This document shows positions 28,142 to 52,816 of a stretch of 64,000 bases of DNA, piece after piece (position 1 is the first letter of the stretch; each line of letters starts with the position of its first letter). The DNA is taken from IMG/VR virus record IMGVR_UViG_3300023296_000874, positions 124,001-188,000 of that record; one strand, 5' to 3'. The notes beneath the pieces are model-generated. The model searched no databases and had not been told where the DNA came from. It saw only the letters and a program-made list of their open reading frames with translations. A program made the position numbers and the translations under genes.

Positions 28142-28336
28142 TCAGTACCTTCGCTGCCGCTTTCGCTGAAGTCTTTCGGTATGCTGACGCATCTGATCAT
28201 AGAACGCGCGGTGGAGACGGTCGAGCTTGTCCTCGATAGAGTCCACCCGGTCCTCAACCGACCGCGCTGCACTCTTGTCCAGCGAGGCTGCAATCCGATC
28301 AGCGAGATCGGATATGCGGTTTTGGATACCGTCCAT
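28142..28336 (-). CDS. Small helical late protein
   Basis: 64 aa, start overlaps the sheath stop. Contains RISDLADRIAAS. Confidence 0.7.
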   Translation of the reverse strand: MDGIQNRISDLADRIAASLDKSAARSVEDRVDSIEDKLDRLHRAFYDQMRQHTERLQRKRQRRY

Positions 28337-31300
28337 CAGCGGCTACGGAGGTTGAAGGTCACCACGATGTAGTTCAGGGGGAACACAGGCACGTAGGCCA
28401 GTTCAACCTGCACGGCGGTCGGGTCCGCTGCATCGGGGGTTGCCTTCACGGCGGTGTAGCTCGTGATGATCTCAGCGGCAATGAGGCTCTTCATTGTGGT
28501 CTTAACCGCGCGCTCGATGTCACCGAGTACGCCGCCAAGGAACTTGATACCAATGAACTGAGAGAGGGTAGAGCGCATCACAAGCTGAACGTGGTCAGAG
28601 ATCGTGATAACGGTCGGCTCCCTCTTCAGGGTGGAGCTCATGTTCGTCGTGAATGCCTGGCGGATGCGGATGTTCGGATCCAGGTCCTCGAGCACGGTGA
28701 TACCGGCTACGGCGGTCTGGTTCTTCTCTACCTCATCCATCTCACGCACGAGGCGCTTGAAGCCAACAATCTGTCGGAAGGTCATGGGCGATGCTACGTC
28801 GTATGCCGTGCTCACGTTGGAGCCCGCAACTGCGGCAGCCAGGAAGGAGCCATCAACGATGTGCTCCGTCTCTACGCCCTGCTCATCCGTCAGCGATACA
28901 ATCGCAGAGTCAGGGTACACAGCCCACAGGCGCTCGTTGGCGTAACCCTGTGCTGCACTCTGAGCGGCGGTAGGAGTGGTACCATCAGCAAATCCGAAGA
29001 TCGTGATGCGCTCCTGACGCCATCGAGGGCTGCTCTGTACGATGCAGTGCGTCTTGCAGAAGGCAATCACCTGCGGCTCGGTCGTCACGGGCATGATGAG
29101 TGCGGGGCGGAACCTGCGCTCAATCGGCTTGCGGAGGCTGTCAATGGCATCGATGTACGATGTCACGGTACCGTCCGTGCCGCCCGTCTCCTTCACAACC
29201 TGCTTTCCGGCAACCAGGAGGGCACCGTTGGCAATCGCAAGGAACATGGCCAGCGTCAGCCGGTTGGTCGGATCCAACGCGCCGTACTCAGCGGTGATGT
29301 CACCGAACTTGGTGAACACCTTGGCGTCGTAGTTCGTCTTCTCGTAGCAGTAGGAGATGTAGTACGTGTCACCGTTGGCGGGCTCGTTTCCGGCCTTGTC
29401 GAAGGTGTCAATGCAAGCGGTGTCGCCCACTCCGATGTCGGCGGTGTTCGCTACCTTCACCTCAGCACCGTGCATCGCGTACACAGGGTTGCTGCTATCC
29501 GTCACGAAGGTCTTGAGCACGCTGAAGCGGATCACGCCTCCGTCGTCGTAGGAGGATGCCTCGGTGGGGAGCAAGAAGCTAATCCGCAGTCCCGTCACTT
29601 CGTCGATGTAGGTCTGTCCCACAACGCCTTCGAAAACGGTGCCGCTACCTGTTCCCGTCGGGTGGCTGATGCTGAAGGCATCGTCCATGAAGGATTCAAC
29701 GGCGAACTGAGCGTATGCGTCTTCCCCGCCATCCGTCTGTCCGGCTTCGAAGCCGAGCAGTGTGTAGGCATCGTTCGCAACCGCGTTCAGGGTCAGAGTC
29801 TCACTCAAGCCCGTTGCGTCAGTAGTGAGGCGCACGCAGTCGCCTTCAACGGTAGCAGTCACATCGCCCAGTGCGAGGTTGATGTCTGCTGCCACGGTGG
29901 TCGCACTCACGGAGCTACCGGTCGTGGTATCGGCATCGAAGCCAAGCTCAGTGTTCGCGGTACCGGAGGCAATCAGGATCAGAGCCGAATCGCCTACGTT
30001 CACGCTGGTCAGTACAACCACGCCACTGTCGTCCGTGGCAACCACTCCAGTGTCGGTCCCAGGTACAACGCCGGTAGAACCGGTGGTGCCCGTAGAGCCG
30101 CTGGAGGTGATGCCCGTTCGAAGTGCGCCGTTGATCTGGTCTGCAACCTCTTCAGCGGTGAGCCCGTTGCCGAGGAAGATCACCTCGGTCAGTGTGCTGC
30201 TCTCATCGCTACGGAGGTAGAAGGTCAGGCCGTCAAGGTCGAAGGTCTGAGTACCAGTACCGGTCACAACTGCGGGTCGCGCCGCCGTCAGGGTGATGGT
30301 AGTTCCATTCACGCTGATGGTGTCGCTCACGCCGTTTTCGAAGGCCCAAGGTCCATCTTCGCCGCAGAACAAGGTCGCGCCGCGAGCAATCTGCTCTTCC
30401 ACTTCAATCTCAACGTACTCTTCAACAGGTACGCCTGAGCCATCGTGGAACATGCCCAGCAGAGTCTGGCTGCCTGTACCCCAGTTCAGGGTCTGGCTAA
30501 TCGCGCTCTTGCTGATGTACTTGGCGTCGTAGATGAAGTCGTTGAGCAGCTCGCTCTCAACCGTGTAGGTACCGGTGCCGGAGGCTCCCGCAACTACGTT
30601 GGTCAGGGTGTAGCAGTCATCAACCAGGAAGTTGGTGAAGTAGGTAGCGAACACACTCTCGTTGGGCTGTACGTCCTCAGCGAGCGTGATGAGCCGGTTG
30701 GCTCCGTCTACCTTGATCACCGTCACCGGGTTGCGGCTCATGGCGTCTACAACATCCTCACCCACGTAGGCGGTGATGAGCTCGGGACGGTCAGTCACAA
30801 GGTCAAGACGCCCATTGGAGATGGCGTTGAAGGTGTCGCTTCCGAGTGTGGTGTCACGCCCGTTGCCCAAGGTGGGCACGTAGGTGAGGCGGAACACGTC
30901 GCTGCTCACTGCCGAGGTAGCGGGGTCCGTGTAGGAAGCGGCGGCATCCAGATACACCTTGGTGTCCACAAGGGTCACGGTGATCTGGGTTTCGTCGAAG
31001 TACTCGGTACCGTCGATGTGAATCACGGAGTTGATTGCGTAGCTGCTTCCCCAGTAGATCAGGGCCGGGCCTGCGCTCTGGTTCTTCACTACGAAGTCAG
31101 TCTCCTCGATGTAGGAGGCATCGCCGGGGGCGAGTCCTACACGGGATACTTCGGTCACATCAGCATCGGGCAGGTAATCGAACGTGTCCTGCCAGGTGTT
31201 GTGGTAGTAGGTCACCAACACAACAGCGCCGGATGCGGGAGCTGCGGCGAGTACGATCTCGCCAGTGCTCCCACTCACGCTGCTCACGGTCACCGCAACG

Positions 31301-31917
31301 CCGTCTACTTCCACAACCACATCAGATGCAGTAGTGGAGGTTACGCCGCCGTTGGTTCCGTCAACAACCGGCACATTGAACACCTTGATGGTGGTCGCGG
31401 TGCCGTCACACTGATCGCTCACGTCGTCCGTGAAGGAAGTGTCGGTACGGTTGAAGTAGTAGGTGCAACGCACGTCGGCAGAAGCACTCGGGAAGCTCTT
31501 CAGCGTCACGAGTCCCAAGGTACCGCTCACTGCGGTAACCTGCACTTCTTCGCCGTCTACGGTGACGGTCACATCTGCTGCGCTGGTCGAGGTCGTACCC
31601 TGCCCATCGCCCTTGACGATTGGGTAGTTCGTTACCTGGAACTGCCGCAGTGCTCCATCTTGTGCTCCAAGGACGGGGCTCTGAGGGTTCGCGAGCGAGG
31701 TTACCCACCGCGCACTCAGATCTTCCTTGGTGATGAGGTTGTCAGAAATCGCCGAGCTGCCGCGAATCATCTCGTAGTCGTCGCGGCACAGCACTTCCTG
31801 CCCTACGCCAATGAAGACGGGAAGGCGAATGGTGTCAATCAGCGTATTGACGGCTGGCTCAAACAGAGTTCGAGTGTACACGCCCGGTGGAACGTAGCTG
31901 GTGAATGGACCCGGCAT
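28336..31917 (-). CDS. Contractile tail sheath protein with large inserted beta domains
   Basis: About 1193 aa. N-terminal YVPPGVYTRT and C-terminal sheath domain (TEPQVIAFCKTHC...ERITIFG...EPTVITISDHV...AYVPVFPLNYIVVTF). Confidence 0.9.
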   Translation of the reverse strand: MPGPFTSYVPPGVYTRTLFEPAVNTLIDTIRLPVFIGVGQEVLCRDDYEMIRGSSAISDNLITKEDLSARWVTSLANPQSPVLGAQDGALRQFQVTNYPIVKGDGQGTTSTSAADVTVTVDGEEVQVTAVSGTLGLVTLKSFPSASADVRCTYYFNRTDTSFTDDVSDQCDGTATTIKVFNVPVVDGTNGGVTSTTASDVVVEVDGVAVTVSSVSGSTGEIVLAAAPASGAVVLVTYYHNTWQDTFDYLPDADVTEVSRVGLAPGDASYIEETDFVVKNQSAGPALIYWGSSYAINSVIHIDGTEYFDETQITVTLVDTKVYLDAAASYTDPATSAVSSDVFRLTYVPTLGNGRDTTLGSDTFNAISNGRLDLVTDRPELITAYVGEDVVDAMSRNPVTVIKVDGANRLITLAEDVQPNESVFATYFTNFLVDDCYTLTNVVAGASGTGTYTVESELLNDFIYDAKYISKSAISQTLNWGTGSQTLLGMFHDGSGVPVEEYVEIEVEEQIARGATLFCGEDGPWAFENGVSDTISVNGTTITLTAARPAVVTGTGTQTFDLDGLTFYLRSDESSTLTEVIFLGNGLTAEEVADQINGALRTGITSSGSTGTTGSTGVVPGTDTGVVATDDSGVVVLTSVNVGDSALILIASGTANTELGFDADTTTGSSVSATTVAADINLALGDVTATVEGDCVRLTTDATGLSETLTLNAVANDAYTLLGFEAGQTDGGEDAYAQFAVESFMDDAFSISHPTGTGSGTVFEGVVGQTYIDEVTGLRISFLLPTEASSYDDGGVIRFSVLKTFVTDSSNPVYAMHGAEVKVANTADIGVGDTACIDTFDKAGNEPANGDTYYISYCYEKTNYDAKVFTKFGDITAEYGALDPTNRLTLAMFLAIANGALLVAGKQVVKETGGTDGTVTSYIDAIDSLRKPIERRFRPALIMPVTTEPQVIAFCKTHCIVQSSPRWRQERITIFGFADGTTPTAAQSAAQGYANERLWAVYPDSAIVSLTDEQGVETEHIVDGSFLAAAVAGSNVSTAYDVASPMTFRQIVGFKRLVREMDEVEKNQTAVAGITVLEDLDPNIRIRQAFTTNMSSTLKREPTVITISDHVQLVMRSTLSQFIGIKFLGGVLGDIERAVKTTMKSLIAAEIITSYTAVKATPDAADPTAVQVELAYVPVFPLNYIVVTFNLRSR

Positions 31918-31987
31918 CAACTGCCTCCGGAGTGGAAAGCTGTGAGACCGCCAATATAGGAGGTCATGATCATCAGCTCCCTCTGAT

Positions 31988-32002: not shown

Positions 32003-32128
32003 ACGGTCTCTGAGAGAGCCGCCGCGACCTACGTCGGTAGGACACTGCACTTGTGCTTGTTGAGCCGTCCAATGTGCTGGGGGCGTAGCTGACTGTGAGT
32101 ATATGCTCAGTTGTATGGAGGACCGAAG

Positions 32129-32539: not shown

Positions 32540-32560
32540 GTCGCCCCACCCCAGGGCTGC

Positions 32561-34024
32561 TTACTTCGCTTGCGCCGTGATCACAGTGCTCACACCACCA
32601 GCCTCGTCAATGACGTACGCCTGAAGCGCGGGCTTCGCGGTGACGTAGCCGTTGCGCGAGTGCCAGCGGTCGTGTCCCGCAAGGCTCGGCATGAGGTAGT
32701 GAACCAACCCGCCGTGCTCCTCAACCTTCTGGTGGTGGAGGTGGCCTCCGAACGCCAGGTGGTGCTCGGTGCGGCCCCACATGCGGCGAGCCTCTGTCGC
32801 AACGATGTGAGCAAGGTCACGGGGCTTCGTGCGGCTACCGTCACCGTGGCTGAAGGCCAGGAGGTTGTCGCCGTACTCCACGTACACGCGGGGAGCGTAG
32901 TCCATCACCACCGTCACGTCGTCCGTGTCACGGTACCAGGCGTTGAGGTAGAGCAGAAGAGCCAGGCCGTTGTGCCGGTCGTGGTTGCCCGCCATCATCA
33001 CACACCGAACAGGGGCTACCTGTCGGAGCAAGTCGATGTAGAGGCGGGTCATCTCACAGCCAGTGATCAGGATCTCGCTGGGAGTGCCGTCACTGTCCTG
33101 CGGTGTGCCCTTGGTAGTGGATGCCGAGTCTCCGTCCACGTCAAAGAAGTCACTGCCGATGGGCAGGATGATCTCGTCAGGGGCGGATGGGAGGCGGCGC
33201 AAGATCTCCTGCGTGGTCTCCCTCAGTCGGCGCTCAGCCTTGGGTCGCGAGTAGCCGTCGCCGGTCTCAGGTCCCCAGGCGTAGGCTCCCCAGTGGAAGT
33301 CGGTCAATCCCATCACGAGCACAAATGGGTGCTCGGAATCGATCAGCTCAAGGGTTGGTACGGAGTAGCCGCCCGCTCCTTCGCCAATACCCTCAATGAG
33401 GGAGCCGAGCACTTCCTGCTCGAACCTGTTCCACTTGTTCGCGTCCTTCTGGATGGCCTTCCACTTGGCGATCTCGTACTGCTGGAAAAGAACCATCTTC
33501 CGGATCTGGAGGGCGTCAGCTACCAGTTCGTCAGTGTCCTTCTCGAGCATCTCCTCATTGCTGAAGGGCTCGCTGTCGTGTGTCCAGCCGTGCTTCGCCT
33601 TGTACTCAACGAACCAGGGGCGCGGAATCTCAAAGCTCCGGCAAATCTGGTTGATGGTGCCGGGCTGTCCGTCCCAGTTGGAGTACGCACGCTTCATCGA
33701 GCGGTGCATGTGCCCCGGCAAGACGATGGGCTTCGGTGAGCTCTTGATGTAGGTGACGTAGGTGTCCGTCTCCTCGTTGTAGTAGTACTCCGTAGCGTGG
33801 AGGTACTTGCTGACCTCTACCTCGTCGGCAGAGTCTTCGTCTTGTGTTGTCTCCTCGTTTTGGTCAGGGCTCGAACCGTTGGCCTTGACATGCTTGATCA
33901 GGGTTCCTGCTTTGTACTTCGAGAGGCCAGTGGTAGCAGAAAGACGGCGGATGCTGATGCCAGTGTTGGCGAGAGCACCCCACCGCAATACGGCTGCTTC
34001 CAGCCAGTCGGGGGTCTGAGACAT
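32561..34024 (-). CDS. Calcineurin-like metallophosphoesterase with N-terminal HTH-like segment
   Basis: 487 aa. All five MPE motifs are present: TDFHWG, GSDFFD, AGNHD, FSHGD, GHLHH. Confidence 0.85.
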   Translation of the reverse strand: MSQTPDWLEAAVLRWGALANTGISIRRLSATTGLSKYKAGTLIKHVKANGSSPDQNEETTQDEDSADEVEVSKYLHATEYYYNEETDTYVTYIKSSPKPIVLPGHMHRSMKRAYSNWDGQPGTINQICRSFEIPRPWFVEYKAKHGWTHDSEPFSNEEMLEKDTDELVADALQIRKMVLFQQYEIAKWKAIQKDANKWNRFEQEVLGSLIEGIGEGAGGYSVPTLELIDSEHPFVLVMGLTDFHWGAYAWGPETGDGYSRPKAERRLRETTQEILRRLPSAPDEIILPIGSDFFDVDGDSASTTKGTPQDSDGTPSEILITGCEMTRLYIDLLRQVAPVRCVMMAGNHDRHNGLALLLYLNAWYRDTDDVTVVMDYAPRVYVEYGDNLLAFSHGDGSRTKPRDLAHIVATEARRMWGRTEHHLAFGGHLHHQKVEEHGGLVHYLMPSLAGHDRWHSRNGYVTAKPALQAYVIDEAGGVSTVITAQAK

Positions 34025-34288
34025 TATTTGCCTCCGGCAAAGGTGGACGCACTTCCGCTCGGGCTACGGGATGTCTGTTTGCTTTTGCAACAGACGAGGT
34101 ATAAACAAGTTAGTGACTGGCACATAATCTCTTTATGTGCCGGGGAGAATCGAGTCGGACTCTCCCTATCCTCTACTGAGAGGTCGGAGAGTTCGTAGGT
34201 TGGCTCCGGCCATAAGGCACCGTGGATTTGGCGTTCGTAGCCCATGGGCAAATCGCATCGACACGGTCTTCCTGTCACCCGCTCTCCC

Positions 34289-35221
34289 TTATTTCTTGGA
34301 GGGCTTCGATCCGTCATCCTTGGGTTCACCCTTCGGTACGGTCTCTGCCTTATCCTCGCCCGGCGTGGGGCTCTTGCCCTTTTCACGCTTGGCGGCGGCT
34401 TCATCTTTCTTAGAGTCGGCCTCGCTTTCCTTTTCCTCACGCTTGCTGTCGGCCTCGGCCTTCAGCTTCGCCGCCATGGCTTCCCAGTCCTTGCGGGTGA
34501 TGTGGCCCTTGTCAGCACCGTCCATCTCTTTGACGTAGTCATTGTAGGAGATGTTGGGTTTCTCACCCAAAACCTTCTCAGCGGTCTCCTCATTCTCTTC
34601 CTGAACCTTGCGCAGGTGTTGGGCAAGCTCCTTGGCTTTCGCGGGTAGACCAGTGATGTACTCGTCTACTTCCACCACGTCAGTGAGAGTCTCGGCTGCG
34701 TCCTCGAGACGCTCCCCAATGTCCTTCTCGTCGTCGTCCTTGTCGCCCAAAATCTCGGAAAGTGCGTCGCGTAGGTCATCCTCGTCGATGTCAACATCGA
34801 TGTCGGCCTCTTCCTTGATGTCCTCTTCCTCAGTCTCGGTGCCCTCGTCATCATCGACGTCAGGGGTCTTGCCTTCAGGGCTATTGGCCTTGTCAGCAAT
34901 GTCCTTCTTGCGTTGGTGCTTTTCGTCGATCTTGTCGATCTTGTCGTCGGTGTTCTTCTTCTTGGCTGCCGAGTCATCTTCATTCCGCGTGGTGGCGCGG
35001 TTGTACTTGTCCCAGAGGCCCTTGATGTAATCGCCCTCGCTCTTCTTGGAGTCTGGGTGCTCCTTCTTGTACTTCTGGTACTGCTTCTTGAACTTGCCGT
35101 CCAGACGCTTCTTCTGAGCATCGGACAGCGCCACGATCAGGCGCGCAATACGGGAGGCGGTACGCGAACGAGGACGTAGCGCAAGGAATCCCAGGCGTAG
35201 TCGGAGCTGAAGCGGTTCCAT
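34289..35221 (-). CDS. Highly charged (D/E/K-rich) largely disordered protein, possible internal/scaffold protein
   Basis: 310 aa dominated by D, E and K. Starts ...RSRTASRIAR..., with a TGATG overlap to the upstream gene. Confidence 0.7.
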   Translation of the reverse strand: MEPLQLRLRLGFLALRPRSRTASRIARLIVALSDAQKKRLDGKFKKQYQKYKKEHPDSKKSEGDYIKGLWDKYNRATTRNEDDSAAKKKNTDDKIDKIDEKHQRKKDIADKANSPEGKTPDVDDDEGTETEEEDIKEEADIDVDIDEDDLRDALSEILGDKDDDEKDIGERLEDAAETLTDVVEVDEYITGLPAKAKELAQHLRKVQEENEETAEKVLGEKPNISYNDYVKEMDGADKGHITRKDWEAMAAKLKAEADSKREEKESEADSKKDEAAAKREKGKSPTPGEDKAETVPKGEPKDDGSKPSKK

Positions 35222-35628
35222 CAGTGTATCACCTTCTTCCCTGTTCGCTTGGCGAACTCGAACTTGTCAAAGCCGCCCTGTCGCGCGTCCAGTTGGGCTT
35301 TGCTCATGGGGGCATACGTGCCATCGACTCTACGTCCAACGGCGCGCTGGCCCGTTGCTCGGCGTACGTCGTTGCGCTTTTCGCGCTCGGTGTCGTAGCT
35401 GTCGTGACGCTTCTCTGCATCTGCCCCAATCATGCGGTCCATGTCCCGCTTTCCAGACCCTCGGAGGTTTCCATCCAGGGGTGTCTGTACTATGGGAGCC
35501 GAGGCCGTGCGCTTGGTGTCCAGGTCGCCGCAGTCGGGACACTTGAACGGAGCGTCACGGTCTCGGATGCCTCGTAGGGCCTCGGAGCGTACTCCACAAG
35601 CCCAGCAGTCGTACTTGTAGGTTGGCAT
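35221..35628 (-). CDS. FmdB-family zinc-ribbon protein
   Basis: MPTYKYDCWACG...FKCPDCG...KRTAS matches the FmdB Zn-ribbon signature. Confidence 0.8.
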   Translation of the reverse strand: MPTYKYDCWACGVRSEALRGIRDRDAPFKCPDCGDLDTKRTASAPIVQTPLDGNLRGSGKRDMDRMIGADAEKRHDSYDTEREKRNDVRRATGQRAVGRRVDGTYAPMSKAQLDARQGGFDKFEFAKRTGKKVIH

Positions 35629-36821
35629 CAGATGATCCTTTCAAAGTTGTGGCTCAGCCCTGTCTTCGGCATGTACGGAGTCAGGGAGGGCACAACCGTC
35701 AAGCTGCTTGGAAGGTTGGCTACGTCCGCATCTGAGGCTGTCCTCAGTGCTTGGAGGTCCTCAACAAAGAAGAAGGAGTGGATGGCGAATGGTACGGGCA
35801 CATGGATGTTCCAATCCGTCTGAAGGGAGAGGTCCATGGACACCATGTAGTACATGTCCTGGCCTGTTTCGTCGTATACCTCATCAGCTTCACCGCCGTG
35901 TGAGATGTCCGTGATCTTGAGGCCCTCGAACTCCAGCTTGCTCTTCTTCTCGCCCCACAAGTACATCAGACAGAGGTCAGCGATCTCTTCCATCTGGATG
36001 GGGTCTCGAGCGAGTACGTCAAAGCTGACGTTCACGTCCCATTGCCCACCGTACTCCAGGGCCGTCAGGGTGCGCTTCTCGGTAACGATGATCGCACTCC
36101 CGTCACCCTCGTGCATGTTGCGCCCGAAGGCCATGATCACGCCAGGAATGGCGGTGTTGTTGAAGGAGTTGTCCGTCACCGTGTAGGGTCCACGGGACGC
36201 TACTGGGTAGTGGTAGTCGGCATAGATGCGTGTGTAGTTGGCCAGGTCTGTCAGGAACGTAATCACTCCGGTGCCGTAGTCGACAGAGTAGTGAGTTCCC
36301 TCAACCAGCACAGTGGTGTCGGCTACGAAGATGAACAGCGTGGCCGGATGGATCATGCCCGCGTCAACGGTCACGGTCGCACCAATGCTGTTGTCCCCAG
36401 GGTCGTACTCAGCCAGGAACTCTCTCGTCACCGCCAGTAGAGGATCTACAGTGAAGGTGGTGTCGGAGTCCCAGTTGATGTAGTAGGCTCCCGCAGGGCT
36501 CGCGAAGGCTGCGCCCGTTGGGTCGTTGGCTACAACCGCGCGTGTGTCCTCTCGGACCCACTCGATGCTGTTCCCCGTCTTGCCTTCCACCCTTGCTTTC
36601 TGGATGTAGGAGATGAGGTGGCCCACGAAGTTGTCCGCCGACATCTGAACCTTGGAGGCTGAGATGTTCTTGACAACGATGCCGTACTGTGGCTGTTCCT
36701 GATAGGCGAACTTATCCTGGATCCAGGGCACCAACTTCTTGTAGTGGTGGTGCCGACCAAAGGAATCCTGTAGCTCTGCAATCAGACGTCGCTTGACGGC
36801 CCTGGAGAGGTAGTAGTACAA
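35628..36821 (-). CDS. Tail terminator / tail completion-like protein
   Basis: 397 aa. GGQWDVNVSFDVLARDPIQMEEIADL suggests the terminator fold, with an inserted beta domain (GTHYSVDYGTGVITF). Position fits. Confidence 0.55.
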   Translation of the reverse strand: MYYYLSRAVKRRLIAELQDSFGRHHHYKKLVPWIQDKFAYQEQPQYGIVVKNISASKVQMSADNFVGHLISYIQKARVEGKTGNSIEWVREDTRAVVANDPTGAAFASPAGAYYINWDSDTTFTVDPLLAVTREFLAEYDPGDNSIGATVTVDAGMIHPATLFIFVADTTVLVEGTHYSVDYGTGVITFLTDLANYTRIYADYHYPVASRGPYTVTDNSFNNTAIPGVIMAFGRNMHEGDGSAIIVTEKRTLTALEYGGQWDVNVSFDVLARDPIQMEEIADLCLMYLWGEKKSKLEFEGLKITDISHGGEADEVYDETGQDMYYMVSMDLSLQTDWNIHVPVPFAIHSFFFVEDLQALRTASDADVANLPSSLTVVPSLTPYMPKTGLSHNFERII

Positions 36822-36824
36822 GGT

Positions 36825-36992
36825 CTACTCCTTGGTGTCTTCGTCCTCGTCACCCTTCTCTACTTCCTCGGCGAGGCGGTTGATGTCGGAAGCGAGACGC
36901 TGCGCGGCACTCTTGACCTCAGGCTTGATCTCAAGCTCCTTGGCGATGGTGTCGAGCTCGTTGGAGATACGGTTCAGTGCTGGTGTTGCCAT
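36825..36992 (-). CDS. 55-aa helical protein (not in ORF track)
   Basis: Manual translation: MATPALNRISNELDTIAKELEIKPEVKSAAQRLASDINRLAEEVEKGDEDEDTKE. Preceded by a GGAG RBS. Confidence 0.65.
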   Translation of the reverse strand: MATPALNRISNELDTIAKELEIKPEVKSAAQRLASDINRLAEEVEKGDEDEDTKE

Positions 36993-37030
36993 GGTTGGCT
37001 CCTGTCAGGTTGGTTGGGGGGTCAAACGTA

Positions 37031-37342
37031 CTACTCGAGAAGGTCCTTGGCGTCGTCGTAGACGCTAACGATCTCATCGTTCAGATCATGCATCGTTCTG
37101 AACTGAAGGTCTTGCAGCTTCTGAAGCAAGTCGTCCGTGAACTGAGGCCGGGCTCCAGAGTCACTCACCATCTCATGTGCTTCACTGAAGAAGTCGTTGA
37201 TGGCTTCCACGCCCTTGTCCGCCTTGTTGCGGAGCTTGAGCAGGTTGTTTCGTGAGCCGGTCTTGTCGTTCAGCTCGGCAACGATGGTGTTCACTTCCGC
37301 GCGGAGCGTAGCGAGACGGTCGGATGGCTTGTCAGAAGGCAT
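37031..37342 (-). CDS. Small coiled-coil protein
   Basis: 103 aa from ATG 37342 (GAGG RBS), directly downstream of the actin-like gene. Confidence 0.7.
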   Translation of the reverse strand: MPSDKPSDRLATLRAEVNTIVAELNDKTGSRNNLLKLRNKADKGVEAINDFFSEAHEMVSDSGARPQFTDDLLQKLQDLQFRTMHDLNDEIVSVYDDAKDLLE

Positions 37343-37349
37343 AGGAACC

Positions 37350-38399
37350 TCAGTAGTTGATGCTCGCATTCACGAGCAGTCCCTTAGCTACCGCACCGAG
37401 GGGATCCTCGGCGTGGCGTACTTCGGAAATGGGGATGGGGAACTTTGTTCGCTTGGCGAACTCCTCCTTGAAGAAGGGGATGAAGTTCTTGGCCAGCGAG
37501 GTACCACCCGCGATGATCAGCGGAATCGGCTCAGGGGCGTCCGCGTCACCACGGATGAACTCCTTCTCGATGTGGTCCAGAGTGTAGTCGATCAGGGCGC
37601 GGTAGTACACCTGGATTGCTTCGCGGGCACGGGCGTTCTTGAGGTCGCCCTCCATGAAGTCCAGCAGGTCCGCTTCCTTCTCCTTCAGGGCCGCGATCTT
37701 CGATGCGGTGCTGTTCACGGCGCGGGCCGCAGAGGAGTCAATCCAGTCGCCGCCACGGGCGAGGCTGAACTTCATCGTGGTGATGGTGCGGTAGGTCAGA
37801 GCCACGTTCACCATTCCTGCTCCGAAGCTCATGGTGAGGGCGCTGAAGCCGTCCTTGTTCGCCTCGCTGAAGCAGATCGCTGCGGCCTCGTTGAAGGGGC
37901 GCGCGTCGTACCCAAGGTCTCCAACGAGACGCTTGAAGACGCCCTCGTGGAAGATCACGTCCTGGTCGGGGCGGTCAATGGGTGCAGCGGGTACGCTGAA
38001 GAAGCAGATCTCATCCTTGACGGAAGGCTTGCCGAGGAGCTGCTCGATCATGAGGCTGAGTACGCCGTAGCTGTCCAGCTCAGTGTTCGAGATCACGCCG
38101 TCCTGAAGGGGGCGTCGTACCTCACGCTTGAACATGTTGGCGATGTGTAGGGCTTCGTCGCCTACAATCACGATGCTGTCGTCCTTCTCGATGTAGTTGA
38201 CGTCACTCAGCTTGAGGAACTGGGTGTGGCCCGGCTCCAGGTCGAGGAACGCGTCCCGCATCTTCTTGGTCGCTACCTTGCCGTCGGTCGTCTTGCGAGC
38301 CGAAAGGAAGTTCATGGTGCCAACGTCCAGACCTACGCCGGGTGCGGCGGCGGGAGCTGACTTGGGAGGCGTGGCCTCCGGCTTGGTATCTTCAGACAT
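37350..38399 (-). CDS. Actin-superfamily ATPase (MreB/MamK/ParM-like)
   Basis: 349 aa. Phosphate-1 GLDVGTMN, RRPLQDGVI, FSVPA, connect-1 NEAAA, phosphate-2 SFGAGMVN, GGDWID, adenosine IIAGGTS, connect-2 AVAKGLL. Confidence 0.85.
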   Translation of the reverse strand: MSEDTKPEATPPKSAPAAAPGVGLDVGTMNFLSARKTTDGKVATKKMRDAFLDLEPGHTQFLKLSDVNYIEKDDSIVIVGDEALHIANMFKREVRRPLQDGVISNTELDSYGVLSLMIEQLLGKPSVKDEICFFSVPAAPIDRPDQDVIFHEGVFKRLVGDLGYDARPFNEAAAICFSEANKDGFSALTMSFGAGMVNVALTYRTITTMKFSLARGGDWIDSSAARAVNSTASKIAALKEKEADLLDFMEGDLKNARAREAIQVYYRALIDYTLDHIEKEFIRGDADAPEPIPLIIAGGTSLAKNFIPFFKEEFAKRTKFPIPISEVRHAEDPLGAVAKGLLVNASINY

Positions 38400-38417
38400 G
38401 TGTATCTCCGGTGTGTA

Positions 38418-38852
38418 TCAGTTCAGCTCGAAGGCTTCTTCGAGCTTGCCGCTCAGAGGAATGTTCACAAGGGACTCCCTCATGGCTCGGGAGCGGTCCC
38501 AGGGGGACCATGCAAATCGGGCAGTCCCTACGGCGTCCTTGGGAAGTGCAAAGGTCCTCCCGTCGTCACACCGGAAAATCACCATCTTCTCGGCGATCTT
38601 CGTTCCTGATGTCACTCCGAAGGCTTCTTCGAGTGCAGGGGGCGTGGAGACGTTGAACAGTCCGTCCCTTGGAGCACGACGCCGTGTGTACGGGCTGTGC
38701 ATGAAACGGGCCTTGCCGGTCAGCTCGTAGGGGATGAAGAAGACGTGGCCTTCCTCGTCCCTGAAACGAGCCCACTTGTCGGCTGTCTTGACCGTAGCTG
38801 AATGCTCAACCGCCCAGGCCAGCTTGTAGATCTCGCGTGCGAGCTTCTTCAT
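38418..38852 (-). CDS. Hypothetical late protein
   Basis: 144 aa. MKKLAREIYKLAWAVEHSATVKTAD, with a short internal repeat (FRDEEGHVFFIP / FRCDDGRTFALP). Confidence 0.7.
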   Translation of the reverse strand: MKKLAREIYKLAWAVEHSATVKTADKWARFRDEEGHVFFIPYELTGKARFMHSPYTRRRAPRDGLFNVSTPPALEEAFGVTSGTKIAEKMVIFRCDDGRTFALPKDAVGTARFAWSPWDRSRAMRESLVNIPLSGKLEEAFELN

Positions 38853-39412
38853 GGTTTCTCCATCAGGTTCCGAAGGTCGTCCTCAGCACTTCCCAGGCTA
38901 CCGTCCTCATTCTCCTCCACCTTGATGCGTGAACCTTTCACATCAGGAGAGGCAAGTACGGAAGGGATGAATACGGGGACGTCTCGGTCTACATGGGTTG
39001 AGGTTTTGGGGTTCGCGGTTCGGGACGGGACGTAGCTAACTTTTCCAATCTGACTCCCGAGACGATCTACCGATGTGATCAACTCCCGAAGGAGTCTGTG
39101 TGTTTCCACATCCGGAGCCGTACTTCGGTCCAGTCCCTTGACGGACTCCACAAAACGATTATGAAGCTCCTCGTAAGAAGGCTCCTCAATCGGTGCGGGG
39201 CCGCGACGTCTCTTGAGTCCCTTCTCGGCGGGCTTGGGTCTCTGCACCGCTGGCGGCACCACCTTGATCTCGCCCTTCTTGATGGCAGTCCTGAGCTGAG
39301 CGCTCCGACGTACAATGCGGTCGTCGATCTCAACCGTACCCACTCTGAACACAATGTTGGGAGTGACGTCGCTGAGCCGGAGTCCGGCAATGTTGCACTT
39401 CAGTGTGATCAT
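38849..39412 (-). CDS. Hypothetical protein, neck module
   Basis: 187 aa, coupled on both sides. Confidence 0.7.
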   Translation of the reverse strand: MITLKCNIAGLRLSDVTPNIVFRVGTVEIDDRIVRRSAQLRTAIKKGEIKVVPPAVQRPKPAEKGLKRRRGPAPIEEPSYEELHNRFVESVKGLDRSTAPDVETHRLLRELITSVDRLGSQIGKVSYVPSRTANPKTSTHVDRDVPVFIPSVLASPDVKGSRIKVEENEDGSLGSAEDDLRNLMEKP

Positions 39413-39870
39413 CAGGAGCCCACCATGATGTACTTCTCGAGCATCTCAACGGCCAGTCGGTCCTGAGCCTTCTCCATGGCGTCAGCCACGAAGTTGAGAG
39501 GATCAATGCCCGGATGCTTGGGGTTGTCGCTGAGGCGGCGGAATGCTACTCCCCTACGGCGCTCACGGGCGGTAGGGATGGCCTTCAGGGACTTGAGGTC
39601 GATGGGGATGACACGGTTGCGCACGTACCGCATCTGGTGAGGCTTGACACCCTGATCGAGGTAGAAGGAAGGGTGGTCGGAGTACACGAGGATCTTGCCG
39701 GGCAACATCTTCCACTTGATGCTGCGCTTGATCTCTTCCTTGTTCTCCAGGTTGGTCTTGCCAATGGCAATCTTGAGCTCTTCAACCGTGAGCTGCCCGA
39801 GCCGGACCAGCATCCGGTTCTCGTTGGCCCGATTGGCAACCGCGATGTCGTTGTTCTCTACGAGGGCCAC
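39412..39870 (-). CDS. Putative neck / tail-completion protein (HK97 gp10-like)
   Basis: 152 aa. IKRSIKW...HPGI..LNFVADAMEKAQ pattern, plus position in the module. Confidence 0.5.
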   Translation of the reverse strand: MALVENNDIAVANRANENRMLVRLGQLTVEELKIAIGKTNLENKEEIKRSIKWKMLPGKILVYSDHPSFYLDQGVKPHQMRYVRNRVIPIDLKSLKAIPTARERRRGVAFRRLSDNPKHPGIDPLNFVADAMEKAQDRLAVEMLEKYIMVGS

Positions 39871-40230
39871 TCAATCTCCTATGACGGTCTCGTCCGATTG
39901 GTACCACCACTGGCCGTCGAAGATGTACACGGCCCCATCATTGACGATGACAGCCTTGTGGCGTCCAGGAGGAATCGGACGCCGACGGGATCGCTTGAAT
40001 TTCTTGGACACGGGAGCTCCGTCATCCCATGTGTCCTGGGTCGCCTTGGCGGTGTTCCCCGGAAGCACGGTCACTTGCTCGACCTTGGCTGTGTATCGAC
40101 CATTCTCGTTGATGTCCTCGGCCCATGCTTTGGTAGGGTCAAAGGCGACGCGGAACAATCCGTACTCTCGCAGGTGAGCCGTCAGGCGGCGGCTCAGTAC
40201 TCCAATATCTCGACTCGTACTCATAATCAC
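39871..40230 (-). CDS. Hypothetical protein, neck module
   Basis: 119 aa, coupled. Confidence 0.65.
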   Translation of the reverse strand: MIMSTSRDIGVLSRRLTAHLREYGLFRVAFDPTKAWAEDINENGRYTAKVEQVTVLPGNTAKATQDTWDDGAPVSKKFKRSRRRPIPPGRHKAVIVNDGAVYIFDGQWWYQSDETVIGD

Positions 40231-41582
40231 CTCACAATTCGACCGTAGGTCGGGGATCGACCTCGGTCCTGCATACCATCACGCGCTTTCTCTTCGCCTG
40301 TGTTGGTGTTGTCGTTGATCTGTGGGTACACGGTGCCCTCCGCACCGGGCTTACCGAACCCACCGTGCTGGCGGGTTTGAGGGTAGGCCAGGTTGGCGAG
40401 CATCTCAGCATTGGCAGGAACCTTGTACCGGATGTCCTTCTCACCGAAGTAGCCGATCATGAAGTGCTGCTGAAGGATGTTGCCACGGTTGGAGGGAACG
40501 TTCACCGCGCCAATGGAGTAGCGGTCGTTGTTCTGCCGGACAATGAAGTCGCGCTGGCTGACCATCGGGGTGGGTCCAGTCCAAACCTCGTACTGGTGGA
40601 GTACCTGCATCCCGTTCTGAGTCAGCTCAATGCGGCGCTCGCCGTCCTGAGGAGCGATCAGGATGTCGTAGGGTCCCTCGTAGCCACCCTGGATGCTCGT
40701 ACCGAAGCAGTTGAGGCAGTCGTTCTCAGCTTGCTTGTGAACGTCCGAGTAGCAAGCGCACCGCACTCCCACCCACTTCCGGATGAACAGCTTGACGGCC
40801 TCGCCGCCTTGCTCGAGGATCCAGCGGTTGCGCCGAATGCCCTCCTTCCAGATGTAGTCCAACTTCTCAATCTCATGCGCGCTGACGCCCTCTACACCCT
40901 TGAGCGGAGTCTCAATCTGAGCTCCCGTGCCGTCATCTACTACGGTGGTGAGCTTGTAGAAGGTCCGCTGTCCGATCTGCCCCGTGAGGAGCGTCGTGTT
41001 GAAGCGGTAGCTCATAGTCACAACAGAGGAGAGGGTAGGGAGCACAGGCGTCACGAGCTTCCGGGTCACCTTGTCCCAAATGCGGGCCTGGTTGAGGAAT
41101 ACCTCGCCGGTAGCTCCGTTCACGCTGCGCACGGGCACAGCCACTCCGTCGATCTTCACTACCACGTCGGAAGGGACGTTGGCGGGGATCGCTTGGGATC
41201 CTTCCTTTACAATCGGGTTCGGCACCTGGATGATGTAGAGACCTTCAGGGTGGTCAGCGCCTCGAGCCGTCATCATTCCGCTGACGTCTTCGTTCAGTAC
41301 CGCCTGGTTCTGGGTGCTGTCACGGAAGAAGGTGGTTCCGATGGGTACGGTGTTGACCTTGGTGTAGGTCGCCCACTGACTGTCCGAGGATCGGTAGAGG
41401 TTGACGCCAAGCACCGTCCACTTCCCATTCCCCAGGATGAGGGCGGGATTGTCCCAACGCACGTCCATCATCCCCACGTCCGGTGAGGTCACGAACATGT
41501 TCAGGGGTGCGATGGGTGTGCGCGGATCATCGCGCTCTCTTGGGTCGGTCTCCCGACTCAGCCTGTAGGTCTCATTAGGCAA
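40227..41582 (-). CDS. Head-completion / neck protein with FN3-like N-terminus and Cys Zn motif
   Basis: 451 aa. RCAC...DCLNCFGTSIQGGY resembles large-myovirus neck proteins. The segment VRWDNP...GVNLYRS is FN3-like. Confidence 0.6.
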   Translation of the reverse strand: MPNETYRLSRETDPRERDDPRTPIAPLNMFVTSPDVGMMDVRWDNPALILGNGKWTVLGVNLYRSSDSQWATYTKVNTVPIGTTFFRDSTQNQAVLNEDVSGMMTARGADHPEGLYIIQVPNPIVKEGSQAIPANVPSDVVVKIDGVAVPVRSVNGATGEVFLNQARIWDKVTRKLVTPVLPTLSSVVTMSYRFNTTLLTGQIGQRTFYKLTTVVDDGTGAQIETPLKGVEGVSAHEIEKLDYIWKEGIRRNRWILEQGGEAVKLFIRKWVGVRCACYSDVHKQAENDCLNCFGTSIQGGYEGPYDILIAPQDGERRIELTQNGMQVLHQYEVWTGPTPMVSQRDFIVRQNNDRYSIGAVNVPSNRGNILQQHFMIGYFGEKDIRYKVPANAEMLANLAYPQTRQHGGFGKPGAEGTVYPQINDNTNTGEEKARDGMQDRGRSPTYGRIVR

Positions 41583-42216
41583 GGTTCACTCCCGGTACGA
41601 GGCGACGCTCGCGGATACTCACCACGAGGTCTACGAAGTTGTCGGGTCTGTAGGATGCGCTCACCACGTCCCAGAGCAGGGAGTAGCTTTCCTCGTGACG
41701 CTCAACGGGTAGCCACCGGTCGAGCAGGTCTTCTGCGCCGTGCTTGTGGATGTAGCGGCTGAAGTCCGGAGCGCTGTCTGCCAGGAAGGATGCGGTGTGG
41801 TTCCACACGCGGGAATCAGTCTCGCCCATCGTCTCGAGCAGGGAGGCTACGTTGATGTGGAACGTCACTTTGGAGCTGAAGAAGTGCTCCATGTGGGGCT
41901 GTCCGCCTACCTCGAGGATGTCCGTGGTCTCGTCCACGATCTCATCTCGTACCGCTGCAACGATGCCGCTGGCGCTCAACATCTCGGCGTAGAGGTCAGA
42001 AGTGCCAAGCACCTTGTTCGGTGTGGCCCACTTCTTCGCCTTGTCCTTGCGGTTGCCGCCGTGGATGCTGTCCTGCTCATCGAGCAAGTCCTTCTGGAGC
42101 TCCCGAACGATGGTATGTCCACCGGGACGGGGCTTCTTCAGACCGTGATCGATCTTCTTGAGGGCCGTCTGCGTGACGTAGTCATTCGCCAGCAGGTCTT
42201 GTAGGGTCTGGGGCAT
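41575..42216 (-). CDS. Hypothetical late protein
   Basis: About 213 aa from ATG 42216, directly downstream of a promoter motif copy. Confidence 0.7.
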   Translation of the reverse strand: MPQTLQDLLANDYVTQTALKKIDHGLKKPRPGGHTIVRELQKDLLDEQDSIHGGNRKDKAKKWATPNKVLGTSDLYAEMLSASGIVAAVRDEIVDETTDILEVGGQPHMEHFFSSKVTFHINVASLLETMGETDSRVWNHTASFLADSAPDFSRYIHKHGAEDLLDRWLPVERHEESYSLLWDVVSASYRPDNFVDLVVSIRERRLVPGVNLA

Positions 42217-42250
42217 GTTGCGCTCGCAAAGGTGTTCAAGCACCCTGGAG

Positions 42251-42265
42251 TACAAATGGACTATG
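42251..42265 (-). promoter_or_regulatory. Candidate late promoter motif, copy 4 (CATAGTCCATTTGTA)
   Basis: Consensus match at the head of the neck/actin/terminator gene run. Confidence 0.7.
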
Positions 42266-42277
42266 AGTGGCGGATCT

Positions 42278-42967
42278 CTACTCGCGGAACTGGTGGTCCA
42301 GTACGTCTGACAGTGCGGGCGGGTAGAACTCTTCGCTGTCTGAAACCCCGATACCAGGCCGGACTGACTCCGTGTCCAAGCTGATTGCCATCAGCCGTAC
42401 CGACGCGGGGACGTGAATCGGAGTGCCGGTGTACGAGTACATGCAGACTTTCTGTCCGCTGTCTCCTCGTAGGTGGTCGCTCCAGTTCGCCATGGCCCCA
42501 ACCTCGTCGAACAGCACCACGTCCGCCCGTCCTACATCCATCGTTCGAGAGGACCAAGCATGTGCATCGATGCCCGCCCTCCTCAACATATCCCTCGTGT
42601 ACGGGTACGCGGAGTACGCTGCTACAGATCCATCGCTGAGCATCAACTCACCCATTCGAGTGAGCATGTCCGTCTTGCCCGAGCGTCGGCCCAAGCACAA
42701 CAGGATCACTTCGGGGTCGGGGTCTGACCTGTAGCGGTCAGATGCCTGAAGCCTGTCAAGATAGGCCCTCTCGACAGGTTCAAGCTCCAATCCCATGCAG
42801 AGCTTCATCAAGAGGCGCTGGATGGGGGTTGAGCTGCGGGTGGTGATGGTGAATGCCGAGGGCACCGGCAAGGCTGCGGGTATCGGCGGGGCGATTACTA
42901 CGCAGTCTGGATGTATCTCATCAGTCCAGAGGAGATGGAGTCTTGCTTCGCTCGGATCCACTGGCAT
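42278..42967 (-). CDS. Truncated terminase-large-subunit-like P-loop ATPase
   Basis: 229 aa. PIQRLLMK, Walker A LGRRSGKT, Walker B VVLFDE and coupling motif TGT are present. No nuclease domain. Confidence 0.6.
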   Translation of the reverse strand: MPVDPSEARLHLLWTDEIHPDCVVIAPPIPAALPVPSAFTITTRSSTPIQRLLMKLCMGLELEPVERAYLDRLQASDRYRSDPDPEVILLCLGRRSGKTDMLTRMGELMLSDGSVAAYSAYPYTRDMLRRAGIDAHAWSSRTMDVGRADVVLFDEVGAMANWSDHLRGDSGQKVCMYSYTGTPIHVPASVRLMAISLDTESVRPGIGVSDSEEFYPPALSDVLDHQFRE

Positions 42968-46038: not shown

Positions 46039-46039
46039 A

Positions 46040-46432: not shown

Positions 46433-46455
46433 CGCGTCCTCCATCAACCGCTTCA

Positions 46456-52807: not shown

Positions 52808-52816
52808 GAGGACCCC

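What the first reader, a model, noticed from the sequence alone, without database searches (positions are those of the whole stretch)
37031..38399. Actin-superfamily ATPase encoded within the neck/head-completion operon
Seen: a 349-aa protein with the full set of actin-fold motifs. Phosphate-2 reads SFGAG rather than the usual DxGxG. It sits between neck genes and the terminator-like gene, downstream of late promoter copy 4, and is followed by two small coiled-coil genes. Established: phage Alp/ParM actins usually partition prophage plasmids, and jumbo-phage PhuZ tubulins position the phage nucleus and traffic capsids. Inference: this is a late, morphogenesis-linked actin cytoskeleton (capsid or tail trafficking, or an assembly ATPase), with 37031-37342 and 36825-36992 as candidate adaptors. 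No parC-like repeat array is visible nearby.
Basis: partly seen in the sequence, partly recalled or inferred. Interest (0 to 1): 0.8.

Follow-up and report, generated by a model that had tools for sequence, protein, structure and literature searches.

The report
Volactin-type actin in huge-phage neck module
A large, uncultured group of very big bacteriophages carries its own actin-like protein (a relative of the archaeal filament protein volactin) wedged among the genes that build the neck of the virus particle, which points to an undescribed actin-based phage cytoskeleton used late in infection.

Summary
Window 37350-38399 (-) encodes a 349-aa actin-fold protein. It is a full-length member of Pfam Volactin (PF25216, E 1.7e-64), not a ParM/Alp or a true MreB. 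Its nearest solved folds are the filament formers MreB, MamK and BeeR.

The "odd" phosphate-2 SFGAG is the signature of the whole family (Ser in 187 of 189 sequences). That includes the haloarchaeal volactins, whose type member forms dynamic filaments, so the Ser does not suggest a dead ATPase.

The gene is widespread in viral data: at least 524 IMG/VR viral contigs (up to 618 kb) carry a relative. Among the closest of these loci it sits in a conserved order: head-completion-like p451, Neck1/tail-completion, p187, ACTIN, tail terminator, Zn-ribbon, sheath. It evolves in step with these structural genes and more slowly than they do. Two cultured relatives with the same module (Tunturi_5, phage G) lack both the actin and p187.

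The invariably linked gene is the upstream p187 (71 of 71 loci).

Best reading: a late, co-transcribed, filament-forming ATPase that works with p187 in virion assembly or positioning. The function itself is inferred. I found no cultured phage carrying it, no RNA data and no paper describing it.

The parts
37350..38399 (-). Volactin-family actin-fold ATPase, 349 aa
   Evidence: ORF. Pfam PF25216, 218.7 bits, E 1.7e-64, residues 22-345 on profile 3-321/321. AF2 model pLDDT 90.9, pTM 0.87. Foldseek PDB top hits MreB, MamK, BeeR, TM 0.63-0.68. Catalytic and nucleotide motifs invariant across the family.
38849..39412 (-). p187: the invariably linked upstream gene and candidate partner/adaptor. Conserved N-terminal ~50 aa, variable low-complexity linker, C-terminal P-x-FIP ... 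A-x-x-ALRxLRKKK helix with a basic tail in most relatives
   Evidence: Profile HMM finds it on the same strand within 3.5 kb upstream of the actin in 71/71 phage loci with enough sequence. Absent from 74 cellular/other volactin loci and from Tunturi_5 and phage G. Motifs seen in alignment A4. No family or fold lead.
39412..39870 (-). p152: Neck1 / tail-completion-like protein (family f5)
   Evidence: 6 of 20 family members hit phrog_5 'tail completion or Neck1 protein', best E 4e-10. Present upstream of the actin in 65/71 loci.
40227..41582 (-). p451: conserved virion neck / head-completion-like protein with a CxC...CxxC cluster
   Evidence: Weak PHROG 'virion structural protein' hit. Atlas structural leads to Phage_HCP and T4 neck protein. 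Homologue in Tunturi_5 annotated 'minor tail protein'. Present upstream in 58/61 loci.
38418..38852 (-). p144: lineage-specific gene between p187 and the actin, made of an internal ~60-aa duplication
   Evidence: Homologues only in the closest relatives L001/L002. The duplication is visible in the translation.
37031..37342 (-). Small acidic protein (103-112 aa) directly after the actin; lineage-specific
   Evidence: ORF. ATG at 37342 with GAGG 5 nt upstream, next to the actin stop codon. No homologue in any other locus by tblastn or phmmer.
36825..36992 (-). Small acidic 55-aa protein; lineage-specific
   Evidence: ORF. AGGAG 7 nt before the ATG. No homologue elsewhere.
35628..36821 (-). p397: tail-terminator / neck gateway-like protein
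   Evidence: AF2 model pLDDT 78. Foldseek PDB top hits are neck chains of phage 812 (E 2e-8), E217, Pa193, XM1 and the A-1(L) gp7 terminator. Atlas leads to SP10_terminator and gp15. Tunturi_5 homologue annotated 'tail terminator'. Downstream of the actin in 71/83 loci.
35221..35628 (-). FmdB-type zinc-ribbon protein conserved between terminator and sheath
   Evidence: Pfam Zn_ribbon_8, E 3e-10. Family present in 60 loci.
28336..31920 (-). Tail sheath (1194 aa), next transcription unit
   Evidence: phrog_2839 tail sheath, E 2e-35; Pfam Phage_sheath_1C. Preceded by motif copy 31988-32003.
42251..42266 (-). Promoter-like motif TCATAGTCCATTTGTA, nearest copy upstream of the actin unit
   Evidence: 5 copies, all on the minus strand, 0.08 expected. 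Each lies in a gap ahead of a gene run. Function as a late promoter is inferred.

Best explanation
The gene encodes a phage version of volactin, an MreB-like bacterial/archaeal actin.

Shown:
- It is a full-length Volactin-family protein with every nucleotide-binding and catalytic motif intact.
- It belongs to a single phage clade of the family.
- It is a long-term, vertically inherited core gene of the neck / tail-terminator module of a large clade of uncultured huge myophages.
- It is always preceded by the gene p187.
- In this genome it is packed head-to-tail with virion genes, downstream of a repeated phage-specific promoter-like motif that also precedes the sheath gene.

Inferred:
- It is made late and abundantly together with the structural proteins.
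- It binds and hydrolyses ATP and assembles into dynamic cytoplasmic filaments, as Haloferax volactin does.
- p187 is its adaptor. p187 has a small N-terminal domain, a disordered linker and a conserved C-terminal helix, usually followed by a basic tail. It would couple the filament to a cargo.
- The most likely task is spatial organisation of the late stage of infection, that is bringing together or positioning heads, tails or finished particles. This would be an actin-based counterpart of the PhuZ tubulin spindle of nucleus-forming jumbo phages.
For: Family and fold:
- Pfam Volactin E 1.7e-64, full length.
- AF2 model pLDDT 90.9. The nearest solved structures are the filament-forming actins MreB, MamK and BeeR, ahead of eukaryotic actin.
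- D25, E171, G193, G195, D218, D221 and G298-G299-T300 are invariant. The S-x-G-x-G phosphate-2 is shared with all 16 haloarchaeal volactins examined. The type member HVO_2015 forms dynamically unstable filaments in vivo (PMC10869688).

Spread:
- At least 524 IMG/VR loci and at least 1976 protein clusters, on contigs of 200-618 kb.

Synteny:
- Order p451 - Neck1 - p187 - ACT - terminator - ZnR - sheath.
- p187 in 71/71 loci, Neck1 65/71, p451 58/61, terminator 71/83.

Co-evolution:
- Actin pairwise identities track those of p451 and the terminator (Spearman 0.81; 0 of 500 permutations reach this).
- The actin is the most conserved of the three: median identity 56% against 46% and 42%.

Phylogeny and gain:
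- Phage-context sequences form one clade.
- Cultured relatives with the module (Tunturi_5, phage G) lack both the actin and p187, so the pair looks like a joint gain.

Other:
- Inteins sit in conserved sites of phage-type copies. On general knowledge, this pattern is typical of important genes.
- Tight gene spacing and the repeated motif.
Against: - There is no experimental datum for any phage member. None of 50,697 deposited phage records except two uncultured assemblies carries it. No RNA run was listed. I found no paper on it.
- Polymerisation is extrapolated from a protein only about 40% identical.
- The Ser in place of the phosphate-2 Asp has not been studied biochemically in any member.
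- Position in a structural operon does not prove a structural or assembly role.
- In 12 of 83 loci the terminator gene is not downstream, so linkage to the tail genes is not absolute.
- p187 has no recognisable fold or family.
- The promoter-like motif is not conserved in relatives and its timing is unknown.
Confidence: 0.5

Rival explanations
1. It is a DNA-positioning or segregation motor of the ParM/AlpC type. Filaments pushed or pulled through the DNA-binding adaptor p187 would move phage genomes, for example to replication or packaging sites, or would partition a plasmid-like carrier state.
For: p187 has the layout of type II partition adaptors: small N-terminal domain, flexible linker, conserved C-terminal helix, usually a basic tail. 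One family member is fused to a ParB HTH DNA-binding domain (P0180). The volactin paper likens its dynamics to ParM. Prophage CGP3 uses the actin AlpC with adaptor AlpA for viral DNA transport (PMC4446434).
Against: No ParM/StbA-type Pfam hit. No centromere-like repeat array within the region. The pair sits inside the virion neck module rather than with replication or early genes. DNA binding by p187 is unsupported.
Confidence: 0.15
2. It is a non-filamentous assembly ATPase or chaperone of the neck/tail. It would use the actin/Hsp70 fold to fold or join neck, terminator or sheath subunits, as the Hsp70 homologue of closteroviruses (plant RNA viruses) acts in virion tail assembly.
For: It lies between Neck1 and the terminator in most loci. 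The best matches among predicted viral structures are viral Hsp70s, since no closer viral relative is in that library. The closterovirus analogy rests on my own knowledge.
Against: It has only the nucleotide-binding actin fold and no substrate-binding domain (349 aa). Solved-structure neighbours are filament formers, not Hsp70. The family's type member polymerises. Its conservation is higher than that of the supposed client proteins. Relatives Tunturi_5 and phage G build the same module without it.
Confidence: 0.12
3. It is a host-takeover factor. A phage copy of a cellular cytoskeletal protein would co-assemble with or replace the host's own volactin/MreB system late in infection, changing cell shape, size or division to raise the burst size.
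For: About 40% identity to cellular volactins of Planctomycetota, Halobacteria, Desulfobacterota and others. The phage clade is nested among bacterial copies in an MreB-rooted tree. Volactin acts in cell shape in Haloferax.
Against: The phage clade is old and monophyletic, and it tracks the phage's structural genes rather than any host group. Universal linkage to the phage-only gene p187 suggests a self-contained system. Cellular volactins were found in a limited set of phyla, while the phage contigs were binned with many different phyla (loci L005-L011). Bin labels are weak evidence, so this last point is soft.
Confidence: 0.12
4. It is a virion-packaged protein. It would be made late, loaded into the particle or attached at the neck, and delivered with the DNA to act at the very start of the next infection.
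For: The gene lies in the middle of virion genes and is co-oriented and tightly spaced with them. On general knowledge, injected proteins of large phages are encoded among late genes.
Against: No virion proteome exists for any carrier. Nothing in the sequence (signal, propeptide, capsid-targeting motif) was seen. Soluble ATPases of this kind are not known virion components.
Confidence: 0.08

Closest known systems
Volactin (VolA, HVO_2015) of Haloferax volcanii; Pfam PF25216
   Same: Same family by profile score (218.7 bits against a cut-off of 35). About 40% identity to haloarchaeal members. Same motif set, including the Ser-type phosphate-2, RRP, SVPAxP and GGDWID.
   Different: Encoded by a phage, in a virion-morphogenesis module, always next to the phage-only gene p187. 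It belongs to a separate clade from the haloarchaeal and planctomycete copies. A cell-shape role is not expected.
MreB / MamK / BeeR (bacterial filament-forming actins)
   Same: Nearest solved folds, TM 0.63-0.68. Conserved RP-x-DGVI, E-x-x-A, GGD-x-x-D and DP-x-x-VA-x-G blocks align with E. coli MreB.
   Different: Below the Pfam MreB cut-off (21.2 against 27 bits, one 70-residue stretch). 15-20% identity. Ser instead of Asp in phosphate 2. No mreCD/rodZ-type neighbours. The N-terminus is a variable low-complexity tail; whether it can bind membrane was not analysed.
AlpC/AlpA of Corynebacterium prophage CGP3, and ParMRC/Alp7AR plasmid systems
   Same: An actin-like ATPase encoded by a phage or mobile element, with a neighbouring small partner gene. 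p187 has an adaptor-like layout.
   Different: No ParM-type family hit, no centromere repeats, partner upstream rather than downstream, and located in the late structural module. Direct sequence comparison with AlpC was not done.
PhuZ tubulin spindle of nucleus-forming jumbo phages
   Same: A cytoskeletal NTPase conserved across a clade of very large phages. The proposed role in organising late infection is analogous (PMC7950403, PMC8314001).
   Different: Actin fold, not tubulin. Different phage clade: relatives are Tunturi_5 and phage G rather than phiKZ-like phages. Embedded in neck genes. No nucleus-shell gene was sought or seen.
Closterovirus Hsp70 homologue (virion tail assembly)
   Same: An actin/Hsp70-fold ATPase tied to virion morphogenesis. 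Appears among the top viral structure matches.
   Different: That protein has an extra C-terminal domain, belongs to the Hsp70 branch and comes from plant RNA viruses. The resemblance is at superfamily level only.

Membership tests
Volactin (Pfam PF25216) | Full-length match to the family profile above the curated cut-off | tested here: met
   218.7 bits against a cut-off of 35; residues 22-345 on profile 3-321/321.
Volactin (Pfam PF25216) | Family motif set shared with the haloarchaeal members (D-x-G-T phosphate 1, S-x-G-x-G-M-x-N phosphate 2, RRP, GGDWID, GGT adenosine) | tested here: met
   Ser191 in 187/189 family sequences, including 16/16 Halobacteria. The other positions are invariant or nearly so.
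Volactin (Pfam PF25216) | Assembles into dynamic filaments in cells | not testable with these tools
   Known only for HVO_2015 (PMC10869688).
MreB/Mbl (Pfam PF06723) | Match to the family profile above the curated cut-off | tested here: not met
   21.2 bits against a cut-off of 27; only residues 67-139.
MreB/Mbl (Pfam PF06723) | D-x-G-G-G phosphate-2 motif | tested here: not met
   S191 aligns with the Asp of E. coli MreB DIGGGT.
MreB/Mbl (Pfam PF06723) | MreB-like three-dimensional fold | tested here: met
   Top PDB matches are MreB, E down to 4e-15, TM 0.63-0.68.
ParM/Alp type II partition systems | ParM/StbA-type actin sequence | tested here: not met
   No such Pfam family at E <= 0.1. No ParM entry in the PDB sequence search (E <= 1) or among the listed top 50 fold matches.
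ParM/Alp type II partition systems | Adjacent centromere-like array of direct repeats | tested here: not met
   Only 2-copy micro-repeats inside coding sequence in 30000-47500. No repeat family near the gene.
ParM/Alp type II partition systems | Neighbouring DNA-binding adaptor that binds the filament | tested here: inconclusive
   The downstream small genes are not conserved. The upstream p187 is always present, but its DNA or actin binding is unknown.
PhuZ-type phage cytoskeleton | Tubulin/FtsZ-fold GTPase | tested here: not met
   Actin fold.
Late virion-morphogenesis gene of a tailed phage | Conserved position and orientation within the neck/tail gene order across relatives | tested here: met
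   p451 - Neck1 - p187 - ACT - terminator - ZnR - sheath in most of the phage loci examined (77 by gene clustering, 83-84 by profile search).
Late virion-morphogenesis gene of a tailed phage | Late transcription, or presence in or requirement for virions | not testable with these tools
   No RNA run listed; no cultured carrier.

The most novel reading that the evidence does not exclude
The actin filament is a physical part of the virion assembly line of these huge phages. Together with p187 it would form a track or scaffold on which filled heads and finished tails are brought together and joined at the neck, or it would be carried on or in the particle. That would be the first actin-based morphogenesis machine in a virus of prokaryotes, gained once as the gene pair p187 + actin by an ancestor that, like Tunturi_5 and phage G, built the same neck without it.
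Probability: 0.2. Interest if true: 0.9.

Novelty: new variant of a known kind. Interest (0 to 1): 0.7.

Why it matters
Phage cytoskeletons are known from the PhuZ tubulin of nucleus-forming jumbo phages and from a few ParM-like actins of prophages and plasmid-prophages. This gene is a different actin lineage, the recently named volactin family. It is a conserved core gene in hundreds of uncultured huge-phage genomes from many environments. It is fixed inside the neck/tail module and paired with an unknown phage-only protein.

If it polymerises, large phages would have acquired a cytoskeleton at least twice, using both major polymer families. That would give a concrete, testable system (two genes, expressible in E. 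coli) for asking how very large virions are organised in small cells.

The gene also widens the known range of the volactin family, which here includes phages, Planctomycetota, Desulfobacterota and others as well as Halobacteria. The analysis also gives a family-wide reading of the Ser-type phosphate-2 motif.

Tried and rejected
- PHROGs gave no family for the actin, p187, p144, p112 or p55.
- The PDB sequence search gave only marginal MamK hits. Profile searches of PDB with the four neighbour families gave nothing significant.
- Pfam scans of all members of the terminator and p451 families gave only weak DUF2460 hits.
- The sigma-70 and intrinsic-terminator scan was at or below the shuffled expectation.
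- The generic repeat finder did not pick up the promoter-like motif. I found it by reading the intergenic gaps and then tested it. It is not conserved in other loci.
- The idea that p397 is a sheath paralogue came from single-linkage clustering. I rejected it: direct BLASTP shows no significant similarity.
- The small downstream genes as conserved adaptors: rejected.
- A haloarchaeal host, suggested by the salt-lake source: considered unlikely. Many encoded proteins are basic (pI above 9) and genes carry GGAG-type ribosome-binding sites.
- RNA evidence: none listed.
- The MreB-rooted tree has a very long outgroup branch. The nesting of the phage clade among bacterial copies is therefore tentative.
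- ParM, AlfA, crenactin and AlpC were not available as tool-supplied sequences and were not put in the tree.
- Literature searches for phage volactin or actin in huge phages found nothing relevant.
Full report
**1. What is at the coordinates**

The minus strand of 37350-38399 carries an ATG-initiated ORF of 349 aa. GGAG lies 8 nt before the start, which is 18 nt after the stop of the preceding gene.

The translation shows the actin/Hsp70/sugar-kinase motif set:
- GVGLDVGTMN (phosphate 1)
- NEA (connect 1)
- SFGAGMVN (phosphate 2)
- GGDWID
- IIAGGTS (adenosine)

Directly downstream lie two small acidic ORFs.
- The first is listed as 37031-37369. The ATG at 37342 has a GAGG 5 nt upstream, lies just after the actin stop codon, and is the more likely start.
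- The second is 36825-36992.

No tandem or dispersed repeat array lies nearby.

**2. Family**

Pfam places the protein, end to end, in PF25216 Volactin (E 1.7e-64). MreB_Mbl scores only as a sub-threshold partial hit, and no ParM-type family appears. PHROGs has no family for it. The PDB holds no sequence relative beyond a marginal MamK hit.

An AlphaFold2 model built on 38 homologues is confident (pLDDT 90.9, pTM 0.87). Its nearest solved structures are MreB from several species, MamK and BeeR (TM 0.63-0.68), ahead of eukaryotic actins. Among predicted viral structures only Hsp70s and a few unnamed proteins come up, so the family is absent from that library.

Volactin was named for HVO_2015 of Haloferax volcanii. 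That protein forms long, dynamically unstable cytoplasmic filaments anchored to the membrane by their tips, and it influences the rod-to-disk transition (PMC10869688).

**3. The "unusual" phosphate-2**

In an alignment of 189 family members the first residue of the motif is Ser in 187. This includes all 16 haloarchaeal and all 38 planctomycete sequences. D25, E171, G193, G195, D218, D221 and G298-G299-T300 are invariant or nearly so.

A profile alignment with E. coli MreB puts S191 on the Asp of DIGGGT. The substitution is thus a hallmark of a family whose type member turns over rapidly in vivo. It is not evidence for a dead enzyme.

**4. What the window is**

The window is part of IMG/VR contig UViG_3300023296_000874 (257.5 kb), from salt-lake metagenomes. 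The minus-strand block from about 2 to 46 kb encodes:
- a gp5-like baseplate hub, a tape-measure-like protein and a tail sheath;
- a tail-terminator-like protein, shown by the structure match to myophage neck chains, by atlas leads and by a homologue annotated "tail terminator" in Tunturiibacter phage Tunturi_5;
- a Neck1/tail-completion-like protein;
- a 451-aa head-completion/neck-like protein.

A 16-nt motif, TCATATTCCATTTGTA, occurs five times, all on the minus strand and in gaps ahead of gene runs. One copy lies just ahead of the sheath gene (0.08 copies expected by chance). The copy at 42251-42266 is the closest one upstream of the actin. From there to the SbcD-like exonuclease gene (32561-34024) most genes abut or overlap; the widest gap is about 260 nt, just ahead of the exonuclease gene. 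Co-transcription with virion genes is therefore likely. Timing was not measured.

**5. Spread and synteny**

The protein has at least 1976 relatives among 90%-identity clusters, many on contigs of 200-530 kb. It has 524 confirmed loci in IMG/VR, on contigs up to 618 kb. It also has 419 loci in species-representative genomes. Among deposited phage genomes only two uncultured huge-phage assemblies carry it, and no cultured phage does.

In the phage loci examined (77 by gene clustering, 83-84 by profile search; the closest relatives) the order is:

p451 - Neck1 - p187 - (variable) - ACTIN - (variable small ORF) - terminator - Zn-ribbon - sheath.

| Gene, relative to the actin | Present in loci with enough flanking sequence |
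|---|---|
| p187, upstream | 71/71 |
| Neck1, upstream | 65/71 |
| p451, upstream | 58/61 |
| Terminator, downstream | 71/83 |

These counts come from profile HMMs.

In 30 of 63 loci nothing separates the actin from the terminator gene.

p187 does not occur next to any of 74 cellular volactin genes. The two cultured phages that share the module lack both p187 and the actin. These are Tunturi_5 (NUDIX - p451-like - hypothetical - terminator - ZnR - sheath) and Bacillus phage G (gp175-gp178). The two genes therefore behave as a pair that was gained together.

**6. Evolution**

In trees of the family, sequences from phage contexts fall in one clade. Halobacteria and Planctomycetota each form their own clade. 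With E. coli MreB as a very distant outgroup, the phage clade nests among bacterial copies. One of these, in the Desulfosarcina variabilis chromosome, sits among ordinary metabolic genes. The root is uncertain.

Across 35 loci the pairwise identities of the actin correlate with those of p451 and of the terminator as well as those two correlate with each other (Spearman 0.81, 0.81 and 0.83; 0 of 500 permutations reach the observed value). The actin is the slowest-evolving of the three, with median identity 56% against 46% and 42%.

This is the behaviour of a vertically inherited core gene under strong constraint. Such constraint is what one expects of a polymer with several interfaces. It is not the behaviour of a mobile accessory gene. 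Inteins with LAGLIDADG or HNH endonucleases interrupt some phage-type copies near phosphate 2.

**7. Mechanism**

Shown: family, fold, intact nucleotide site, module position, universal linkage to p187, and co-evolution with virion genes.

Inferred: late, abundant expression; ATP-driven dynamic filaments; p187 as adaptor.

p187 has a conserved N-terminal ~50 residues, a variable low-complexity linker, and a conserved C-terminal P-x-FIP ... A-x-x-ALRxLRKKK segment. In most relatives this segment is followed by a basic tail. That layout recalls the adaptors of type II partition systems, but nothing more can be said about it.

I rate a role in organising late virion assembly or positioning as the most likely function. 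The alternatives are DNA positioning, a non-polymerising assembly ATPase, host-cytoskeleton takeover, and a packaged protein.

**8. Comparison and novelty**

The protein is a member of the Volactin family. It works, as far as can be inferred, like a small filament-plus-adaptor system. It is not a member of MreB, ParM/Alp or PhuZ.

Phage cytoskeletal proteins are a known kind. An actin of this lineage, fixed in the neck module of a large uncultured huge-phage clade and paired with a phage-only partner, was not found in the searchable literature. I rate it a new variant of a known kind, with interest 0.7.

Noticed in passing
P0121, P0126, P0129, P0139 (homologues of window 37350-38399): About 700-800-aa phage-type volactins are split by inteins carrying LAGLIDADG or HNH homing endonucleases. 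The inserts lie at several nearby points around the phosphate-2 region, about residues 175-215 of the window protein.
   Followed up: partly
P0180, P0187, P0123 (family members from the representative search): Domain fusions in the family: ParB-HTH + volactin; volactin + Wzz/GNVR/ParA-like tyrosine-kinase module (1160 aa); and a tandem double volactin (729 aa). Several others have 150-570-aa N-terminal extensions of unknown nature.
   Followed up: partly
L098 and L119 (both on IMGVR_UViG_3300025141_000016, 297 kb): Two copies of the Neck1 - p187 - actin block lie on one viral contig. The actins are 81% identical, but p187 and Neck1 only 36% and 33%. This is either a real duplication or gene conversion, or a chimeric assembly of two related phages.
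   Followed up: partly
window 46500-64000 (+ strand): After a strand switch and a rise in G+C (to 0.62-0.65) the genes look cellular: an ABC transporter set (NMT1/OmpA-domain binding protein, permease, ATPase), aspartate carbamoyltransferase, peptide deformylase, a MopE-type Cys/Asp repeat protein and a VWA protein. The pyrB-like protein is 72% identical to one metagenomic relative on a 1.8-kb contig and otherwise only about 56% identical to its relatives, several of them named aspartate carbamoyltransferase by their source. This could be an auxiliary-gene island of the phage or a junction with unsampled host DNA.
   Followed up: partly
window 4424-4439, 26066-26081, 31988-32003, 42251-42266, 46456-46471 (all minus strand): The motif TCATATTCCATTTGTA is repeated 5 times ahead of gene runs (0.08 expected). 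It overlaps the TTG that the ORF list gives as the start of the 226-aa gene at 42255. That gene more likely starts at the ATG near 42215. The motif was not found in any related locus.
   Followed up: partly
L166 (LR756511.1, 595-kb uncultured phage): A second, more distant phage-borne volactin (30% identity) lies in a different neighbourhood, with none of the neck-module genes within 10 kb. This suggests an independent acquisition.
   Followed up: partly
window 38418-38852 (-): The 144-aa gene between p187 and the actin is an internal duplication of a ~60-aa unit (RFRDEEGHVFFIPYELTGKARF... / IFRCDDGRTFALPKDAVGTARF...). It is found only in the closest relatives.
   Followed up: no
window 44044-46125 (-) and L163 (Tunturi_5 gp321): A large NUDIX protein, here fused to a 2H-phosphoesterase / 2'-5' RNA-ligase-like domain with a weak Acb1-like hit, keeps the same position upstream of the neck genes in this phage and in the cultured phage Tunturi_5.
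   Followed up: no
window 32561-34024 (-) and 34289-35221 (-): An SbcD/Mre11-like exonuclease and a highly charged 310-aa protein (27% Asp+Glu, 21% Lys+Arg) lie between the Zn-ribbon gene and the sheath gene. In most relatives the sheath gene follows the Zn-ribbon gene directly.
   Followed up: no
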